A stretch of DNA of 64,000 nt from Octopus bimaculoides (Eukaryota). The notes under the pieces were generated by a model. It made no database searches. It saw nothing but the letters and a program-made list of their open reading frames with translations, and was not told the DNA's origin. Both the position numbers and the translations under genes were made by a program. The stretch spans positions 9,893,224 to 9,957,223 of the forward strand of contig NC_069005.1 of assembly GCF_001194135.2 (NCBI RefSeq). The letters run 5' to 3'. Of this stretch, positions 6,782-50,517 are shown one piece after another. The first letter of the stretch is position 1. The number at the start of each line of letters is the position of its first letter.

Positions 6782-6869
6782 AATCATCATCATTATCCAA
6801 TCAATAACAATAACAGCAGCAAAATAATTTGACTTCATATTTCTCCCTAACCACTCTCATTTCTCTCTC

Positions 6870-7906
6870 TCTCTCTCTCTCATTTGCTTGTTCTTTCTGA
6901 CTTCTTATCTCTCTTTCTCTGTCACTTGTTCTTTCTGACTTCTTATCCCTCTTTCTCTGTCACTTGTTCTTTCTGTTCTGGATTCTCTCTCTCTCTCTCT
7001 TTTTCTTTCCTTCTCCCCCACTTCTTTCTCTCTTTCGTATTCATTCTTTCTCCTTTTTCTCTCTCCCCCCTTCATTCACTCACTCTATCCCTCTCTCTCT
7101 CATTCTTCCTGACTTCCTATCTCTCTTTCTCTGTCACTTGTTCTTTCTGTTCTGGGTTCTCTCTCTTTCTCTCTCTCTTTTTCTTTTCTTCTCCCCCACT
7201 TCTTTCTCCTTTTTCTCTCTCTCCTTCATTTACTCACTCTATCCCTCTCTCTCTCATTCTTCCTGACTTCTTATCTCTCTTTCTCTGTCACTTGTTCTTT
7301 CTGTTCTGGGTTCTCTCTCTCTCTCTCTCTTTCTTTCCTTCTCCCCCACTTCTTTCTCTCTTTCGTATTCATTCTTTCTCCTTTTTCTCTCTCTCTCCTT
7401 CATTCACTCACTCTATCCCTCTCTCTCTCATTCTTCCTGACCTCCTATCTCTCTTTCTCTGTCACTTGTTCTTTCTGTTCTGGGTTCTCTCTTTCTCTCT
7501 CTCTCTTTTTTTTTCTTTCCTTCTCCCCCACTTCTTTCTCCTATTTCTCTCTCCCTCCTTCATTTACTCACTCTATCCCTCTCTCTCTCTCATTCTTCCT
7601 GACTTCTTATCTCTCTTTCTGTTCTGGCTTCTCTCTCTCTCTCTCTCTCTTTTTCTTTCCTTCTCCCCCACTTCTTTCTCCTTTTTCTCTCTCCCTCCTT
7701 CATTCACTCACTCTATCCCTCTCTCTCTCATTCTTCCTGACTTTTTATCTCTCTTTCTCTGTCACTTGTTCTTCCTGTTCTGGGTTCTCTCTCTGTCTCT
7801 TTTCTTTCCTTCTGCCCCACTTCTTTCTCCTTTTTCCCTCTCTCTCTCTCTCATTCTTCCTGACTTCTTATCTCTCTTTCTCTGTCACTTGTTCTTTCTG
7901 TTCTGG

Positions 7907-7953
<47 letters not shown>

Positions 7954-9130
7954 CCTTCTCCCCCACTTCTTTCTTTCTCCTTTTTCTCTCTCCTTCATTC
8001 ACTCACACTATCCCTCTCTCTCTTATTCTTCCTGACTTCCTATCTCTCTTTCTCTGTCACTTATTCTTTCTGTTCTGGGTTCTCTCTCTCTTTTTCTTTC
8101 CTTCTCCCCCACTTCTTTCTCCTTTTTCTCTCTCCCTCCTTCATTCACTCACTCTATCCCGNNNNNNNNNNNNNNNNNNNNNNNNNNNNNNNNNNNNNNN
8201 NNNNNNNNNNNNNNNNNNNNNNNNNNNNNNNNNNNNNNNNNTTCTCTCTCTCTTTTTCTTTCCTTCTCCCCCACTTCTTTCTCCTTTTTCTCTCTCCCTC
8301 CTTCATTCACTCACTCTATCCCGCTCTCTCTCTCTTTTTTTCTTACCTTCTCCCCCACTTCTTTCTCTCTCTCTTTCTCTGTCACTTGTTCTTTCTGTTC
8401 TGGGTTCTCTCTCTCTCTCTCTTTCCTTCTCCCCCACTTCTTTCTCCTTTTTCTCTCTCCCTCCTTCATTCACCTTTTTCTCTCTCCCTCCTTCATTCAC
8501 TCACTCTATCCCTCTCTCTCTCTCTCATTCTTCCTGACTTCTTATCTCTCTTTCTCTGTCACTTGTTCTTTCTGTTCTGGGTTCTCTCCCTCTCTTTTTT
8601 CTTTCCTTCTCTCTCATTCTTCCTGACTTCTTATCTCTCTTTCTCTGTCACTTGTTCTTTCTGTTCTGGGTTCTCTCTTTCCTTCTCCCCCACTTCTTTC
8701 TCCTTTTTCTCTCTCCCTCCTTCATTCACTCACTCTATCCCTCTCTCTCTCTCTCTTCCCTTCTCCCCCACTTCTTTCCCCCTCCTTCATTCACTCACTC
8801 TNNNNNNNNNNNNNNNNNNNNNNNNNNNNNNNNNNNNNNNNNNNNNNNNNNNNNNTTCTCTCTCATTCTTCCTGACTTCTTATCTCTCTTTCTCTGTCAC
8901 TTGTTCTTTCTGTTCTGGGTTCTCTCTCTCTCTCTCTCTTTTTCTTTCCTTCTCCCCCACTTCTTTCTCTCTTTCGTATTCATTCTTTCACCTTTTTCTC
9001 TCTCTCTCTCTCTTTCATTCACTCTATCCCTCTCTCTTTCATTCTTCCTGACTTCCTATCTCTCTTTCTTTCCTTCTTCCTCACCCACTTCTTTTCCTTC
9101 TTCGTCACCCACTTCTTTCTCTCCTTTTTC
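6870..9130 (+). repeat. Polypyrimidine minisatellite, unit about 120-175 bp, roughly 13 or more copies
   Basis: Recurring unit TTCTTTCTGTTCTGGGTT(CT)n...CCTTCTCCCCCACTTCTTTCTC...CATTCACTCACTCTATCCC(TC)nATTCTTCCTGACTTCTTATCTCTCTTTCTCTGTCACTTG; unit length varies with the (CT)n tracts; interrupted by two gaps. Confidence 0.95.
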
Positions 9131-45627: not shown

Positions 45628-46312
45628 CTGTCGTTTGTTCGTTTGAAAAGAATATATTATTTAGTTATCTATAATAACCTCCATCACTCCCACCACCAAC
45701 AACACAACCACCGCCATTTTAAATCATTATCAGAGCTTTTGAACGCTGCATTTCTTGAGAAGCTCTTCTCTCTCATGTTTCATACGCACGTGAATAGAGA
45801 ACGGACAGAAGCAGATGATGCCTGCAGTTTCCGGTGGTGGTGTAAGTTAGGCCCTGTACATTATATATATATATATATATATATACTCTCTTTTATCTCT
45901 CACTTGTTTCAATCATTGGACTGCGGATATGCTGAGGTGCTGCCTTCATGTGTTTAGTCGTAGAGTACTAAATGCCATAGTAGAGATTAATATATTTTAC
46001 TTTGGTTGAGACTGTCTCTTACTAATACGCGTTCACCTATAGGTACAAAGGGTCGTTACTTGAAGATCTAGTACACCCACACGTGAAACACAGACTTGTA
46101 AGAGACCGATTCAACCAAAATACTACTACTACTACTATTACTACTACTACTACTCTACGACAGACTGGCGTTCCGTTCAGGAAGTATGTTGATATTTCGA
46201 CCAATTCCATGCCGTGGCAGAAATCGGGTAACAGCCTTGAGTATCTTCTGCTATAGCCTCAGGGAGACCAAGGCCTTGTTTAGCGAATCTGGTAGGCAGA
46301 AACTGAGTGTAA

Positions 46313-46548
46313 GGCGGTGAGCTGACAGAAACGTTAGCACGCCGGGCGAAATGCTTAGCGGAATTTCGTCTGTCTTTATGTTCTGAGTTTAAATTCCGCC
46401 GAGGCCGACTTTGCCTTTCATCCTTTCGGGGTCGATACATTAAGTACCAGTTACGCACTGGGGTCGATCTTGTCGACTTAATCTCTTTGTCTGTCCTTGT
46501 TTGTCCCCTCTGTGTGTAGCCCCTTGTGGGCAATAAAGAAATAAGAAA
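46313..46548 (+). mobile_element. Full-length solitary SINE-B (reference copy)
   Basis: GGCGGTGAGCTGACAGAAACGTTAGC (A-box region), GAGTTTAAATTCC (B box), central GCCTTTCATCCTTTCGGGGTCGAT..AAGTACCAG, tail GGGCAATAAAGAAATAAGAA. Confidence 0.9.
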
Positions 46549-46645
46549 CAGTGTGGAAGCCGTCATGTATGCATGTATGTATGCATGCATGCATGTATGT
46601 ATGCATGCATATATGAATGCGTGCATGTATGTATGTATGTATGTA

Positions 46646-46863
46646 TGAAGGGGTTCGAAAACGTTCCTGGCTTTAAGATTATCGCGAAAGGCATGGCTGG
46701 ATGCACAACTTTCCGGGTTATTTTACAGGGCTAAGGAAAAACTGAAGGGCCTGTGCAAGAAGTGTGTGAATCTGAGAAGGGACCATGTTGAATAAAATCA
46801 TAATTAACTGATCCACCTGTATTTTCTTTTACCCAAAGCTAGGAACTGTTCAGCACCCCCTCG
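46646..46863 (+). mobile_element. Mariner-derived MITE (218 bp) flanked by TA
   Basis: Ends TGAAGGGGTTCGAAAACGTTCCTGGCTTT and AAAGCTAGGAACTGTTCAGCACCCCCTCG are inverted; TA on both sides; internal LCKKCVNLRRDHVE* resembles the mariner C-terminus (KCIELKGDYVE*). Confidence 0.85.
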
Positions 46864-47589
46864 TATATACAGGTGTAGTGTGTGTTTGTCTCCCACACCG
46901 CATGCCAAGCGGTGCTGGTTTGTTTACGGTCACGTGATTTAACACCCAAATTTGAAACCAATATTTGTCCGATTCTGCCAAAAATATTCGCTATTCAAGA
47001 CGTTTGAAGGACATTTGGTGCACATTTCTAGCAAGTCGAGCGACCACCTAAGGGTTACTTCGTTGTTCTGTACACGTTTTCTTCATATTTACGTAATTCG
47101 ATTTATCAATATTTCTTCAAGTCACTGCTTTATTTCCTTTTACTTTTAACCTTTTCATGTTCCCCCAACATTAAATACGTTTTTCCACCCATTTAAATAT
47201 CTATCGTCTAGTCGGTCCGATAGATAATGACACACAGACGAAAGCATTAGTGGAATTGATACGAAACTTCCATTGAGAGATAGCAGTGAAAAATCATACA
47301 ACGAAGCACTTTAGAAATATTTGATAATGGAGACAAATTTAAAAGAAAATTCTGCGACATCATTCTGGCATCTTCGTTCTAGAAACATAAGTTATTGTTG
47401 TCATTTTTGATGTTTAACCCTGGGTTAACTTTGATCGAACAGACCAATGGCCTATGATGATCTAAACGTGTTCATCTATATGTTTCTCTAATGTACAGGT
47501 AATCCAGGACAGCATAGTCCACCGTGTTCATTCCTAAGACGGTGGAATGTGATCCGAAGAAGACGTAGTTTTAACATGTAGCAGGTAGT

Positions 47590-48965
47590 AAGGCAACGAG
47601 CTGGCAGAATCTTTAGCACGACGAGGTCGACTTTGCCTTTCATCCTTCCGGGGTCGATAAATCAAGTCACAGTTACGCACTGGGGTCGATGTAATCAACT
47701 TAATCCCTTTGTCTGTCCTTGTTTATCCCCTCTATATTTATCCCCTTGTGGGCAATAAAGAAATAAGAATCTTTAGCACGCCGAGCAAGATGTTTAGCGG
47801 TATTTCGTCCGTCTTGTGTTCTGAGTTCAAATTCCGCCAAGGTCGACTTTCATGATTTTGTGGTCGATAAAATAAGTACAAGTCCGCAACGTGTAGTTTT
47901 TTAATCAACCCCAAAAGGATAACAAGTAAATTCAACCTCGGTGGAATTTGAACTCAAAACGTAAAGAGCCGGAAGAAATGCAGCTATACATACATTTGTA
48001 ATGATTCAACAAGCTTACTGCCTTAATATTTGTTCTGAAGTTTGGCATAAGGCCAACAAGTTCAGGGACGTGGGGTGAGTCGATTACATCGACCCCAGTA
48101 CTCAACTGGTACTTATTTTATCGACGCTGAAGGGATGAAAAAAGGCAAAGTGGATCTCGGTGGAATTTGACAAACGAAATACCGCTGAGCATTTTGCCCG
48201 GTATGCTGACGTTTTCTTTTCTTCTCTAGGCACAACATCCGAAATTTTTTGGAGGGAGGGGCCAGTCGATTAGATCGACTCCAGTATGCAACTGGTACTT
48301 AATTTATCCACCCCGAAAGGATGAAAGGCAAATTTAACTTCGGCGGAATTTGAACTGGGAACGTAACGACAGACGAAATCCCGAGAAGCATTTCGACCGA
48401 CGTACTAACGTTTCTTATTTCGTTATTGCCCACAAGGGGCTAAACACAGAGGGGACAAACAAGGACAGGCAAAGGGATTAAGTTGATTAAATCGACCCCA
48501 GTGCGTAACTGGTACTTAATTTATCGACCCCGAAAGGATGAAAGGCAAAGTTGACCACGGCGGAATTTGAACTCAGAACATAACGGCAGACGAAATACTG
48601 CTAAGCATTTCCCCCTGGCGTGCTAACGTTTTTGCCAGCTCGCCCTCTTAGAAATAATTATTAGAATTACCCATTAAAGAAAAAAACATATCTTCAAACA
48701 ATAGGTACAGGGTTCAAATACCATAGAAAATAATAAATTCTTTCATCGTTTGACGTTTAAATCTGTTAATATTTCGAAAATATTCAGCTAAGAATTGGAT
48801 TGTTAAGGGTTGTAAAACAAAGGGGAGAAACAAGGATAGGCAAAGGGATTAAGTTGATTACATCGACCCCAGTGCGTAATTGGTAATTATTTAATCTAAC
48901 CCGAAAGGATGAAAGGCAAAATCGACCTCGGCGGAATTTGAACTAAGAACGTAACGGTAGACGAA
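47590..48965. mobile_element. Dense SINE-B cluster: plus-strand nested pair, minus-strand trimer and fragments
   Basis: About seven partial or full copies; tail-to-A-box junctions at about 47768, 48215 and 48413. Confidence 0.9.
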
Positions 48966-49254
48966 AAAAGGTGAAATATATTGAAGCATTTCAGAAATTA
49001 AGAGTCCGATTTGTAAATTATGAAATTTGAAAAGTCGATAAATATAAATGAATTTTTATGTGAAACAATGAAAATGTAAGTTATTTTATTCTTTTTTTTT
49101 TATTTCCCGTGGTATATGAAACCGTGTATAAACTTTATGAAAATTTAATATTCAATTGTGATATTTTGATAACGACAGCGTTCCAGATGTATGTTGTTTA
49201 TATATGTTTGTCCGGTTGTCTATATATATGTGTGTATTTATGTATATGTACAAT

Positions 49255-49640
49255 ACAGCGTGACTGTGTGGTAAGAAGATTGCTTCTCAGTCACATGGTT
49301 CTGGGTTCAGTTCCACCGCATGGCACCTTGGGCAAGTGTCTTCTACTATAGCCTTGGGCCGGCCAAAGCTTTTAAAGTGGATTTGTTAGACGGAAACTGA
49401 AAGAAGACCGTCGTATATACATATATGTGTGTGTGTTTTTGTGTCTGTGTCCCCCCCCCCTCCATCATTGCTCAACAACCGGTGTTGGTGTGATCTATGA
49501 CACCGTAACTTAGCGGTTCGGCAAGATAACCGATAGAGTAAGTATTAGGCTTTAGAAAAACAAGTCTCGACTAAAATACTTCAAGGCGGTGCTCCAGCAT
49601 TGCCGCAGACTAATGACTGAAACAAAATAAAAGATAAAAG
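49255..49640 (+). mobile_element. Full-length SINE-A
   Basis: GCGTGACTGTGTGGTAAG...GGTTCAGTTCC...GGAAACTGAAAGAAGACCGTCG...AATGACTGAAACAAAATAAAAGATAAAAG. Confidence 0.9.
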
Positions 49641-49714
<74 letters not shown>

Positions 49715-49804
49715 AAATATACATAGTACATGTATGTATGTATGTATGCATGTATGTATGCATGAATGAATGAATATATGTGTGCACAATACGCATGTGT
49801 GTCT

Positions 49805-50517
49805 AATGGTTTCAAATTTCGGCACACAAGCAGCTATTGTTCGGGGAAGGGATTAAGTGGATTTCATCGACGCCAGTGCACAACTGGTACTTTATTTTAT
49901 CGACTCTAAAAGGATGAAAAACAATGTAGGCACTTAGAAAATAATGAACAGAAAGAAATTCTGCTGAGCATTTTGTACGACGCGGTAAAGACTCAATCAG
50001 TTTGCCACCTTAATGAGTGCATTTACATTGAAAATTATACCTGCACACATTGTATGAAGTTTGAGCAATGTTGTATATTCTTTTCTACTCCAGGCACAAA
50101 GCCCGAAATTTTGGGGGAGAGGGCTAGTCGATTAGATCGACCCAGTACAGAACTGGTATTTAATTTATTGATGAAAGACAAAGTCGACCTCGGTGGGATT
50201 TGAACTCGGAACGTAAAGACAGACGAAATACCGCTAAGCATTTCGCCCGGTGTGCTAATGATTCTTATTTCTTTATTGCCCACAAGGAGCTAAACATAGA
50301 GGGGACAAACAAGGAGAGACAAAGGGATTAAGTGGATTACATCGACCCTTGTGCGTAACTGGTACTTAATTTATCGACTCCGAAAGGATGAAAGGCAAAG
50401 TCGACCTCGGCGGAATTTGAACTCTGGCATTCGCCGGCGTGCTAATGATTCTTAATTCTTTATTTCCCACAAGGAGCTAAACATAGAGGGGACAAACAAG
50501 GACAGACAAAGGGATTA
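49805..50517 (-). mobile_element. SINE-B cluster, chain of at least three copies running into a gap
   Basis: Junctions at about 50263 and 50451, both preceded by the same variant GTGCTAATGATTCT. Confidence 0.85.

What the first reader, a model, noticed from the sequence alone, without database searches (positions are those of the whole stretch)
47598..50517. SINE-B appears to insert into the A box of its own family (self-targeted nesting)
Seen: at eight sites (about 15005, 18987, 35475, 47768, 48215, 48413, 50263, 50451) the A-rich tail of one SINE-B is fused at essentially the same point of another copy, GGCAGAA^ACGTTAGC, inside the Pol III A-box region. At 47606-47620 and 47766-47780 an exact 15-bp non-consensus sequence (AGAATCTTTAGCACG) flanks a 5'-truncated copy, as a TPRT target-site duplication would. 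A 14-bp variant is likewise shared at about 50252 and 50439. In chains, the GGGCAATAAAGAAATAAG-tailed subfamily is always upstream and other tail types are downstream, which gives an age order and argues against simple unequal crossing-over. Inference: the mobilising LINE cuts, or primes through AGAA microhomology, at the SINE's own promoter. A new copy would then take over an already permissive Pol III locus and push the resident downstream. I do not know whether this is described for this family.
Basis: partly seen in the sequence, partly recalled or inferred. Interest (0 to 1): 0.7.

Follow-up and report, generated by a model that had tools for sequence, protein, structure and literature searches.

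The report
Octopus SINE nests in its own head
A young subfamily of a short octopus retrotransposon almost always lands at one short sequence near the 5' end of older copies of its own family, building head-to-tail chains; this is a self-directed version of the site-specific insertion already known for a few other SINE/LINE pairs.

Summary
The window is Octopus bimaculoides chromosome DNA. Seven of the eight complete tails of the 'T1' SINE-B subfamily (...GGGCAATAAAGAAATAAG) are fused, in the same orientation, to consensus position 17-22 of another SINE-B copy. One T2 tail is fused to a T3 copy at the same point. Chance gives about 1e-20.

The best explanation is sequence-directed insertion by target-primed reverse transcription at GGCA^GAA(A/T)C.
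- Two 5'-truncated T1 copies are bracketed by duplications of the resident's own non-consensus head: 15/15 bp at 47606/47766, and about 25 bp at 50451/50264.
- The only T1 copy outside SINE-B sits in another SINE at the only other GGCAGAAAC 9-mer in the window, with a 12-bp target-site duplication.
- Chains mix subfamilies, and divergence usually rises downstream.

Full-length T1 copies join seamlessly and carry T1-like heads. For these, insertion resolved through homology cannot be told apart from reverse-transcriptase template switching. An O. vulgaris locus shows that such switching does occur.

The 'A box' identity is only a 6-of-9 consensus match, and 'promoter takeover' is untested. The closest precedent is crocodilian SINEU-3/Tx1-Mar. 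I could not run a genome-wide test. I rate it a new variant of a known kind, of moderate interest.

The parts
47590..47620 (+). Chain D: 5' head (consensus 1-31) of the resident older-subfamily SINE-B. Its last 15 bp are the 5' copy of the duplication AGAATCTTTAGCACG (47606-47620).
   Evidence: It carries T at position 21 (older-subfamily state) and a private T at position 23, both also found in the downstream copy.
47621..47765 (+). Chain D: 5'-truncated T1 insert (consensus about 84 to the tail ...GGGCAATAAAGAAATA).
   Evidence: T1 3' domain 47700-47769, 95.7% to consensus. The core has T1-type GATAAAT(T/C)AAG.
47766..47883 (+). Chain D: 3' copy of the duplication (47766-47780) followed by the rest of the resident (consensus 17 to about 149). 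It is of the older subfamily (GATAAAATAAG) and is cut off by an inverted SINE-B fragment.
47881..47990 (-). Old 5'-truncated SINE-B fragment F (consensus about 43-150). It lies just 3' of chain E and meets chain D tail-to-tail.
   Evidence: 24% diverged.
47985..48215 (-). Chain E, member 3: T3-type SINE-B from consensus about 21 to its own 3' end. It is the only T3 3' domain in the window.
48216..48414 (-). Chain E, member 2: T2-type SINE-B from consensus 18 to the tail AGAAGAAAAGAAA, fused to T3 at the canonical point.
   Evidence: T2 diagnostics GTGGAT and GTTGCATAC are present.
48415..48648 (-). Chain E, member 1: full-length T1 with a T1-like head. Its tail is fused to T2 at 48415|48414.
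   Evidence: It is the least diverged member of the chain (4.2% against 10.7%).
48800..48975 (-). Older T1-like copy, 5'-truncated, with a degenerate tail. It is not in a chain.
50449..50517 (-). Chain G, member 0: the 3' end of a T1 copy; the rest is lost in the assembly gap at 50518.
50265..50451 (-). Chain G, member 1: a copy of the resident's head segment GAATCATTAGCACGCCGGCGAATGC (50451-50427), then 5'-truncated T1 (consensus about 72 to the tail; 50426-50265).
   Evidence: The head segment has T21 and A23 like the downstream T2, not the T1 state GAAACG.
50078..50264 (-). Chain G, member 2: the T2 resident from consensus 18. It begins with the second copy of the duplication (50264 to about 50238).
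14788..15207 (+). Chain A: T1 (lacking consensus about 34-68) -> T2, junction at 15004/15005. The whole chain is flanked by the 16-bp duplication AGTCCAATGA[C/G]TGAAA (14788-14803 and 15192-15207), inside a SINE-A.
18774..19220 (-). Chain B: full-length T1 (3.4% from the core consensus) -> old (ATT)n-tailed SINE-B (18%), junction at about 18987.
35257..35734 (+). Chain C: T1 -> T1 (junction about 35474) -> T2. The second T1 is joined to the T2 core through a later deletion joint at 35654-35671.
46298..46554 (+). Solitary full-length T1 (46311-46544) inserted in the 3' part of a SINE-A at GGCA^GAAACTGAGTGT. The duplication is AGAAACTGAGTGT (46298-46310) against AGAAAC--AGTGT (46544-46554).

Best explanation
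T1 is a young subfamily of a tRNA-type octopus SINE ('SINE-B'). A LINE machinery copies it into DNA by target-primed reverse transcription. That machinery nicks, or can only prime, at a short sequence, (G)GCA^GAA(A/T)C, which lies 17-18 nt from the 5' end of every SINE-B copy.

The T1 RNA ends in ...AAUAAGAA, so it can pair with the nicked GAA.

If the cDNA stops early, the second nick falls 14-27 bp downstream. The truncated T1 then ends up between two copies of the resident's positions 17/18 to 31-44, with the resident's head left upstream.

If the cDNA reaches the T1 5' end, its last 20-30 nt are homologous to the resident's head. The 5' join is then made by annealing, which gives a seamless T1 -> resident fusion with no visible duplication.

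Each event recreates an intact GGCAGAA head at the 5' end of the chain. The downstream copies are now preceded by ATAA instead of GGCA. Later hits therefore go to the front, and chains run from youngest to oldest.

Shown: the fixed junction, the duplications in chains D and G, and the same 9-mer at the non-SINE-B target.
Inferred: the nick position, the role of tail pairing, the homology-mediated 5' join, and the identity of the LINE.
For: (1) 7 of 8 T1 tails, plus one T2 tail, lie at consensus 17-22 in the same orientation; P is about 6e-21.

(2) Chain D: a 15/15-bp duplication brackets a T1 that starts at consensus about 84. The duplicated segment carries the resident's states (T21, private T23), not T1's GAAACG. 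The resident belongs to a different, older subfamily (GATAAAATAAG).

(3) Chain G: a 25-27-bp duplicated head segment with T21/A23 is shared by a truncated T1 and the T2 behind it, and it recurs after the next T1 upstream. This is tandem copies sandwiching the duplication.

(4) The one T1 outside SINE-B sits in SINE-A at GGCA^GAAAC with a 12-13-bp duplication. The 9-mer GGCAGAAAC occurs only twice in 55.6 kb, at this site and in a SINE-B head, against 0.23 expected.

(5) Chains mix subfamilies that have their own core diagnostics. T2 is an independent SINE with its own head (L005 226-57 and 18941-19153; the latter has an ortholog in O. vulgaris L004).

(6) Divergence from each copy's own subfamily consensus rises downstream in chains C, E and G, and from the common core in chains B and D. 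T1 averages 6.7% and T2 9.2%.

(7) No copy in the window starts at position 18-22 without a tail in front. This argues against a general RNA 5' end or reverse-transcriptase stop at that point.

(8) Precedents: SINEU-3/Tx1-Mar builds tandem copies sandwiching a 16-bp duplication by sequential insertion (PMC4494074). The first bases of duplications correlate with the 3' microsatellite of RTE-mobilised SINEs (PMC6007223).
Against: - The three full-length upstream T1 copies in chains B, C and E show no duplication and no doubled head. In chains A, B and C position 21 of the head differs from that of the downstream copy. The model therefore needs an unproven homology-mediated 5' join for them.
- In chain A the upstream T1 is no younger than the T2 behind it (10.1% against 8.6%). 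Its head segment differs from the T2's at about 5 of 17 positions, although the chain's outer duplication is 15/16 intact.
- Internal deletions are common in these copies. The 'truncations' in chains A and G could be deletions instead.
- Two solitary T2 copies (L005) and one older copy (13742) keep an intact GGCAGAA(A/T)C and are unoccupied.
- Two T1 tails outside the window join SINE-B at other positions.
- The sample is 64 kb plus about 70 kb of other loci. No partner LINE was seen.
Confidence: 0.6

Rival explanations
1. RNA-level chimeras. During one insertion event the reverse transcriptase copies a resident-type SINE-B RNA up to about position 18-21. It then jumps, helped by AGAA microhomology, onto the 3' end of a T1 RNA and copies that. 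The chain is thus born in one step, and the members are of equal insertion age.
For: - Full-length T1 copies at the front of chains B, C and E have T1-like heads, with no duplication and no doubled head.
- Chain A has one clean outer duplication around the whole dimer, and its T1 is not younger.
- Jumping among SINE-B RNAs does occur. O. vulgaris L004 24007-24259 is T1[91-232]-SINE-B[49-108]-SINE-B[1-56] and replaces about 800 bp that are present in O. bimaculoides.
- L003 joins a T1 tail to T2 at about position 118.
Against: - Known end-to-end jumps occur at the donor's 5' end, which here is position 1, not position 18. No copy in the window starts at 18-22 on its own, so there is no evidence of an RNA end or a stop there.
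- Chains D and G would need a second jump from T1 back onto the same donor RNA, re-copying positions 31-18, to explain the duplicated private variants.
- It does not explain the S insertion at GGCAGAAAC in SINE-A.
- The age gradient in 5 of 6 chains is unexpected.
Confidence: 0.2
2. Composite masters. One or a few ancestral T1-T2 (or longer) fusions became source genes and were retrotransposed as units through the downstream member's tail. Most junctions would then be inherited rather than independent.
For: - All four T2 copies in the window, and the one in L003, are preceded by T1.
- Chain A is flanked as a unit by a 16-bp duplication.
- T1 has no T>=4 Pol III terminator, so transcripts from a chain head would read into the next member.
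Against: - The downstream partner varies: T2, T1, T3, (ATT)n-type and an older type.
- The T1 parts of T1-T2 pairs differ in structure: full, deleted 34-68, deleted 44-72. They share no private junction variants.
- Solitary T1 (S) and solitary full-length T2 copies exist.
- Even on this view at least five independent fusions at the same point are needed.
Confidence: 0.08
3. DNA-level rearrangement without retrotransposition: unequal crossing-over, replication slippage or gene conversion between neighbouring copies at the short AGAA(AC) repeat.
For: - The unit from position 22 to the tail is bounded by AGAAAC on both sides once a T1 lies next to a duplication.
- Deletion joints at microhomologies are seen elsewhere (35654-35671; possibly L003).
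Against: - This route produces arrays of one subfamily and one age, but the chains are heterogeneous.
- It would need pre-existing adjacent copies.
- It does not explain the truncated inserts bracketed by resident sequence, or the S site.
Confidence: 0.05
4. Artefact of a gap-rich short-read assembly joining repeats wrongly, or rolling-circle or ribozyme-type tandem elements (retrozymes).
For: The window has 22 N gaps, and one chain abuts a gap.
Against: - Seven junctions have different private sequences, so they are distinct loci.
- A tail-to-head junction cannot arise by collapse at a shared k-mer.
- No ribozyme or tRNA family reaches even E<=10 in 46200-50520.
Confidence: 0.02

Closest known systems
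SINEU-3 mobilised by Tx1-Mar LINEs in crocodilians (Kojima 2015, PMC4494074)
   Same: A SINE of which about 90% of copies sit at one position of one repeated sequence, with a constant duplication of about 16 bp. Tandem SINE copies 'sandwiching a TSD' are explained by sequential insertion at the regenerated target. Chains D and G here have exactly that architecture.
   Different: There the target is an unrelated DNA transposon (Mariner-N4_AMi), and a LINE partner with the same target is known. Here the target lies in the 5' head of the SINE's own family. Insert and target are therefore homologous and most joins are seamless. No partner LINE was identified.
Target-specific non-LTR retrotransposons: Tx1L in Tx1D, Keno in U2 genes, R2 in 28S rDNA (as summarised in PMC4494074)
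   Same: Endonuclease-defined insertion into a multicopy sequence. Co-transcription with the target can reinforce specificity. T1 lacks a Pol III terminator, so transcripts from chains would carry downstream target sequence.
   Different: Those are autonomous LINEs. No LINE, endonuclease type or co-transcript was observed here. The specificity here is high but not absolute.
RTE-related SINE insertion signature (Nishiyama and Ohshima 2018, PMC6007223)
   Same: The first bases of the duplication correlate with the microsatellite-like 3' end of the SINE RNA, suggesting that priming depends on tail-to-target pairing. Here the tail ends in AAGAA and the duplication starts with (A)GAA.
   Different: That signature is a loose preference (a T stretch one helical turn upstream), not a 9-bp site. 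A 3-4 nt pairing alone cannot explain 7 of 8 hits in one position.
Chimeric retrocopies made by LINE template switching, such as U6-L1 (own knowledge; cited in PMC4494074)
   Same: Two RNAs joined head-to-tail within one pair of duplications. L004 24007-24259 looks like such an event.
   Different: Those junctions are at the 5' end of the first-copied RNA and do not duplicate its sequence. Here the junction is 17-21 nt inside, and two cases duplicate 15-27 bp.
Alu insertions into the A-rich tails of older Alus, and Pol III-directed integration by Ty3 and Dictyostelium TRE elements (own knowledge, not tested)
   Same: Retroelements clustering on members of their own family (Alu) or at Pol III genes (Ty3, TRE).
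   Different: Alu-in-tail puts the newcomer downstream and follows a generic TT|AAAA preference. Ty3 and TRE read the transcription complex, not a sequence. Here the off-family hit lies in the 3' part of SINE-A at the same 9-mer, which favours sequence reading.

Membership tests
tRNA-type SINE (SINE2) | Internal Pol III promoter: a B box (GGTTCGANNCC) and an A box (TRGCNNAGTGG) in the 5' head | tested here: inconclusive
   By eye on the consensus. The B-box-like GAGTTCAAATTCC at 75-87 is a good match. There are two A-box candidates, TGGCAGAAACG (13-23, 12 nt from the 5' end) and TAGCACGCCGG (25-35). Each matches 6 of 9 specified positions. No functional test was possible.
tRNA-type SINE (SINE2) | Recognisable tRNA-like cloverleaf | tested here: not met
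   ARAGORN finds 0 genes. Rfam gives no tRNA hit at the gathering threshold, or at E<=10 in 46200-50520. The head is too degenerate.
tRNA-type SINE (SINE2) | Short, non-coding, dispersed copies with variable target-site duplications and a LINE-like 3' tail | tested here: met
   About 23 copies in 55.6 kb. Duplications of 12-16 bp flank S and chain A. Subfamily-specific 3' domains end in A-rich or (ATT)n tails.
Deu/Nin-type conserved central domain SINE superfamily | Shared central domain found in SINEs of distant animals | tested here: inconclusive
   The 21-mer GGTCGACTTTGCCTTTCATCC and its continuation ...TTTCGAGGTCGATAAA occur behind an unrelated tRNA-like head in metagenome contig L002. 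Naming the domain rests on memory. No reference consensus was available.
Target-specific SINE/LINE system (SINEU-3/Tx1-Mar type) | The large majority of copies sit at one position of one sequence, in one orientation | tested here: met
   7 of 8 T1 tails in the window. The eighth is at the same 9-mer elsewhere. The sample is small, and two non-canonical junctions exist outside the window.
Target-specific SINE/LINE system (SINEU-3/Tx1-Mar type) | A constant duplication derived from the target, and tandem copies sandwiching it | tested here: met
   Chain D has 15/15 bp. Chain G has about 25 bp, seen twice. This is not visible for full-length inserts.
Target-specific SINE/LINE system (SINEU-3/Tx1-Mar type) | A partner LINE sharing the 3' end and the same target | not testable with these tools
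   There is no LINE in the window, and no eukaryotic genome search was available. Only a T1-like 3' end without a SINE-B core was seen (L005 7490-7555). O. bimaculoides is reported to have full-length RTE and Dong LINEs (PMC9115989).
Template-switch chimeric retrocopies | Junction at the 5' end of the first-copied RNA, and a single outer duplication | tested here: not met
   The junction is at position 17-22, not 1. Inner duplications exist in chains D and G. Chain A's outer duplication is compatible.
Dimeric or composite SINE family | Uniform dimer structure with shared diagnostic junction changes and halves of equal age | tested here: not met
   Partners and structures vary. Solitary T1 and T2 copies exist. 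Ages differ in most chains.
Retrozyme / hammerhead tandem repeats | A self-cleaving ribozyme motif at the unit boundary | tested here: not met
   No ribozyme family is detected.

The most novel reading that the evidence does not exclude
A SINE subfamily and its LINE partner have evolved an endonuclease or priming specificity for a motif inside the A-box region of the SINE's own family. Every new copy would then land at a site already proven to be an accessible Pol III locus. It would decapitate the resident's promoter (TGGCA replaced by ATAA) and become the transcribed front unit. This would be an intra-family 'cuckoo' or safe-haven strategy. It would also leave a readable stratigraphy of subfamily succession in each chain.
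Probability: 0.2. Interest if true: 0.75.

Novelty: new variant of a known kind. Interest (0 to 1): 0.5.

Why it matters
If it holds genome-wide, it matters in four ways.
- It gives octopus, whose genome is unusually rich in SINEs, a sequence-specific SINE whose target is its own family. That means a defined 9-bp site with which to find and test the responsible LINE endonuclease.
- It offers a natural case of retrotransposition into a homologous target, which tests how the 5' junction is resolved.
- Chains whose order records the succession of subfamilies could be used for dating.
- It is a practical warning that 'dimeric' or 'trimeric' SINE consensus sequences from repeat finders may be nested insertions.

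Self-nesting would also confine a large share of new insertions to junk DNA. That bears on how octopus tolerates its SINE load.

Tried and rejected
Attempts to enlarge the sample:
- Exact-pattern scans of metagenome, prokaryote-genome and viral collections for the T1 tail found nothing. A scan for the core domain found only an unrelated SINE (L002).
- A protein search with the open antisense frame of SINE-B found one 543-bp contig (L003).
- O. bimaculoides PIF1-like proteins from the window's Helitron remnant are not on record with positions. No ortholog of the window could therefore be fetched, and the filled-versus-empty test on the window's chains could not be done.
- A rhodopsin query did give three orthologous loci of about 24 kb (L004-L006). 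These hold no canonical T1 chain. They do hold solitary T2 copies and one aberrant T1 chimera.
- Searching papers for the element's sequence strings found nothing.

Ideas rejected:
- RNase P-type processing at position 17|18 as the source of a fixed RNA 5' end. No acceptor-stem pairing can be drawn, and no tRNA model hit exists.
- A 'T2-type head' diagnostic (GATGCGAGC) for chain A. The O. bimaculoides ortholog of the O. vulgaris T2 copy reads differently.
- Newer copies inserting into the T1 tail from downstream. Chain A's outer duplication pairs the T1 5' flank with the T2 3' flank.
- Pol III-complex tethering. No T1 lies in any SINE-A head, and the one hit in SINE-A is in its 3' part at the same 9-mer.
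Full report
WHAT THE WINDOW IS

The window is repeat-rich animal DNA with 22 assembly gaps. A Helitron-type PIF1 helicase remnant at 32360-32905 (-) is an annotated gene of Octopus bimaculoides assembly GCA_001194135.2. This places the window on CM046625.1 near 9.9 Mb.

ANATOMY OF THE ELEMENT

'SINE-B' has about 23 copies or fragments in 55.6 kb of non-N sequence. All copies share three parts:
- a head, AAGGCGGCGAGCTGGCAGAAACGTTAGCACGCCGGGCGAAATGCTTAGCGG...;
- a B-box-like GAGTTCAAATTCC;
- a central domain, ...GGTCGACTTTGCCTTTCATCCTTTCGGGGTCGATAAATTAAGTACCAGTT...GGGGTCGATnTAATCGACT.

After that they split into subfamilies by 3' domain:
- T1 ends ...TTAATCCCTTTGTCTGTCC...CCCCTTGTGGGCAATAAAGAAATAAGAA.
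- T2 ends ...GGCCCCCTCCCCCAAAATTTCGGGCCTTGTGCCTAGAGTAGAAAAG.
- There is a single T3 copy.
- Several older types have (ATT)n tails.

T1 and T2 also differ in the core. T1 has GTTACGCAC where T2 has GTTGCGTAC, and TCGAT where T2 has TGGAT. They are therefore separate lineages.

Neither ARAGORN nor Rfam recognises a tRNA or any ribozyme in these copies. The same central domain follows an unrelated tRNA-like head in a metagenome contig (L002). It is thus one of the widely shared SINE core domains. I recall it as Deu/Nin-like but could not test that.

THE OBSERVATION

All eight junctions are real. The window holds eight complete T1 tails. Seven of them run straight into another SINE-B copy, in the same orientation, at consensus position 17-22:

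| Site | Junction |
|---|---|
| 15004/5 | T1->T2 |
| ~18987 | T1->(ATT)n type |
| ~35474 | T1->T1 |
| 47765/6 | T1->older type |
| 48415/4 | T1->T2 |
| 50265/4 | T1->T2 |
| 50452/1 | T1->T1 |

A T2 tail is joined to the T3 copy at the same point (~48213).

There are about 18 available sites and a 6-nt tolerance. A random insertion therefore hits such a site with probability of about 1e-3, and P(>=7 of 8) is about 6e-21. The junctions differ in private substitutions, so they are distinct loci and not an assembly artefact. The 15-mer AGAATCTTTAGCACG is present exactly twice, at 47606 and 47766.

EVIDENCE FOR DNA-LEVEL, SEQUENCE-DIRECTED INSERTION

(a) Chain D reads as follows:
- head 1-31 (...GGCAGAATCTTTAGCACG);
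- then T1 from consensus about 84 to its tail;
- then AGAATCTTTAGCACG again;
- then the rest of a copy of an older subfamily (GATAAAATAAG).

The repeated 15 bp carries T at position 21 and a private T at position 23. T at 21 is the state of the older subfamilies; the T1 heads that keep this position read A (the head in front of chain D's own truncated T1 reads T, and this account assigns that head to the resident). So the segment in front of the truncated T1 is a copy of the resident. This is what a staggered cut and a 5'-truncated cDNA produce.

(b) Chain G repeats the pattern. GAATCATTAGCAC[G/A]CCGG(G)CGAA(A)TGC, with T21/A23, precedes both a T1 that starts at about 72 and the T2 behind it. 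It also follows the tail of a further T1 upstream. The copies therefore sandwich the duplication.

(c) The only T1 not followed by SINE-B is a full-length copy in the 3' part of a CORE-type SINE-A. It was inserted at GGCA^GAAACTGAGTGT with a 12-13-bp duplication. The 9-mer GGCAGAAAC occurs only twice in the window, here and in a SINE-B head, against 0.23 expected. The target is therefore a short sequence, not the SINE-B element or a Pol III complex as such. In line with this, none of the dozen or so SINE-A heads carries a T1.

(d) T2 is an independent SINE. Two full-length T2 copies with their own heads and no T1 lie near the O. bimaculoides rhodopsin gene. One of them has an ortholog in O. 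vulgaris. Chain A (T1->T2) is flanked as a whole by a 16-bp duplication, 15/16 identical, inside a SINE-A. This is expected if a T2 landed there first.

(e) Divergence from each copy's own subfamily consensus rises from front to back in three chains:
- chain C: 6.7, 9.7, 8.8%;
- chain E: 4.2, 10.7%;
- chain G: 4.5, 7.9, 8.7%.

Measured against the common core, it also rises in chain B (3.4 against 18%) and chain D (8 against 15%). Chain A is the exception (10.1 against 8.6%). None of these contrasts is significant alone.

WHAT DOES NOT FIT SIMPLY

The full-length T1 copies at the front of chains B, C and E have no visible duplication and no doubled head. Their heads look like T1, with A at position 21. 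In chains A, B and C this differs from the copy behind.

Plain staggered-cut insertion predicts resident 1-31 followed by T1 1-237, and that is not seen. I therefore infer that a complete cDNA joins by annealing, because its last 20-30 nt are homologous to the resident's head. This gives a seamless product in which either head may survive. It is an extension of the known microhomology use at LINE 5' junctions, but it is not shown here.

The alternative for these cases is a one-step chimera. The reverse transcriptase would leave a resident-type RNA near position 18-21 and jump onto the T1 3' end. That such jumps occur is shown by an O. vulgaris locus. There, T1[91-232], SINE-B[49-108] and SINE-B[1-56] are strung together in place of about 800 bp that are present in O. 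bimaculoides. A small metagenome contig also joins a T1 tail to T2 at about position 118. That could equally be a later deletion.

Three points count against jumping as the general cause:
- known jumps happen at the donor's 5' end, and no copy in the window starts at 18-22 on its own;
- chains D and G would require a jump back onto the same donor;
- the S site is unexplained.

OTHER RIVALS

Unequal crossing-over cannot make mixed-subfamily chains. Composite T1-T2 masters may have contributed, for three reasons:
- every T2 in the window is preceded by T1;
- chain A is flanked as a unit;
- T1 has no T>=4 terminator, so read-through is expected.

But the partners and structures vary, and solitary T1 and T2 copies exist. 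At least five independent fusions at the same point are still needed.

THE 'A BOX'

Two overlapping candidates each match 6 of the 9 specified positions of TRGCNNAGTGG:
- TGGCAGAAACG at 13-23. This lies 12 nt from the 5' end, the usual spacing, and the cut falls inside it.
- TAGCACGCCGG at 25-35. The cut falls 4-8 nt upstream of it, and the duplication covers its first half.

'A-box region' is a fair description, but function is untested. After an insertion the downstream copy is preceded by ATAA instead of TGGCA, so candidate 1 is destroyed. Whether this silences the resident, or whether the front unit is preferentially transcribed, cannot be told from sequence.

COMPARISON WITH KNOWN SYSTEMS

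- The nearest precedent is SINEU-3 of crocodilians. About 90% of its copies lie at one site of the transposon Mariner-N4_AMi, with a 16-bp duplication. Tandem copies 'sandwiching a TSD' are attributed to sequential insertion, and mobilisation is by target-specific Tx1-Mar LINEs (PMC4494074).
- Tx1L in Tx1D, Keno in U2 genes and R2 in rDNA are autonomous analogues.
- For RTE-mobilised SINEs, the first base of the duplication tracks the 3' microsatellite of the RNA (PMC6007223). This parallels tail ...AAGAA against duplication (A)GAA... here.
- O. bimaculoides is reported to have full-length RTE and Dong LINEs (PMC9115989). Which one, if either, moves T1 is unknown.

What is different here is that the target lies in the SINE's own family head. 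This makes the nesting self-referential and most joins seamless. I found no description of this for octopus SINEs in the searchable literature. The original octopus SINE paper and Repbase entries could not be read.

VERDICT

Sequence-directed insertion at GGCA^GAA(A/T)C is the best explanation (about 0.6), and template switching is a real but probably minor contributor. The finding is a new variant of a known kind. The main limit is sample size: 64 kb plus about 70 kb of other loci. The decisive genome-wide and cross-species tests are specified but could not be run with the tools available.

Noticed in passing
window 47860-47900 (junction near 47881-47883): Two SINE-B copies on opposite strands (chain D member 2 on +, fragment F on -) meet tail-to-tail. 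Both are cut at the element's internal palindrome CCAGTTACGCACTGG. This looks like a hairpin-mediated inversion or foldback breakpoint.
   Followed up: partly
L004 24007-24259 (O. vulgaris) against L005 19957-20754 (O. bimaculoides): A chimera of T1[91-232], SINE-B[49-108] and SINE-B[1-56] replaces about 800 bp present in the other species. This is the signature of multiple reverse-transcriptase template switches with a target deletion.
   Followed up: partly
L004 22447-22703 against L005 18948-19204: An orthologous full-length T2 copy, together with about 50 bp of its 3' flank, is inverted between O. vulgaris and O. bimaculoides. O. vulgaris also has about 3.7 kb of extra sequence next to it.
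   Followed up: no
L005 7490-7555: A sequence 80% similar to the T1 3' end (...TTTGTCCCAGCTTTGTTGAGCCCTGTGTGGCTAATAAAAGAAAT) occurs without a SINE-B core in front. It is a candidate fragment of the LINE, or of another SINE, that shares the T1 tail.
   Followed up: no
window 35654-35671: A deletion joint inside chain C. The T1 3' domain (…TCTATGTTTA) is fused to T2 core position about 140 (CGCACTGG…) at a GTTTA/GTTA microhomology, removing a T1 tail and the first 120 nt or so of the T2.
   Followed up: partly
window 6868-8677 (and on to about 9300): A CT-rich tandem array with nested periods of about 38, 89, 154-177 and 328 bp. It has extreme strand skew (GC skew down to -0.64) and is interrupted by two gaps.
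   Followed up: partly
window 32360-32905 (-): A Helitron-type PIF1 helicase C-terminal fragment (Pfam PF21530), annotated as a 175-aa gene in the assembly. Its closest relatives are other O. bimaculoides copies at 62-77% identity.
   Followed up: partly
L002 6380-6613 (metagenome contig Ga0066187_1002493): An unrelated tRNA-like SINE head is followed by the same central domain as SINE-B (GGTCGACTTTGCCTTTCATCCTTTCGAGGTCGATAAA). The domain is therefore shared well beyond octopus.
   Followed up: no
window, all T1 copies (for example 46177-46626 -, 18952-19287 +): The antisense strand of T1 is an almost uninterrupted open reading frame. The repeat unit from position 22 to the tail is 216 nt (72 codons), so chains keep the frame. 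ORF finders can therefore report long spurious proteins here.
   Followed up: partly
window 13742-13975, 15398-15660, 18774-18985: Older SINE-B subfamilies end in (ATT)n, the microsatellite associated with Dong-type LINEs. A full-length Dong is reported in this species. A different partner from that of T1 and T2 is likely.
   Followed up: no
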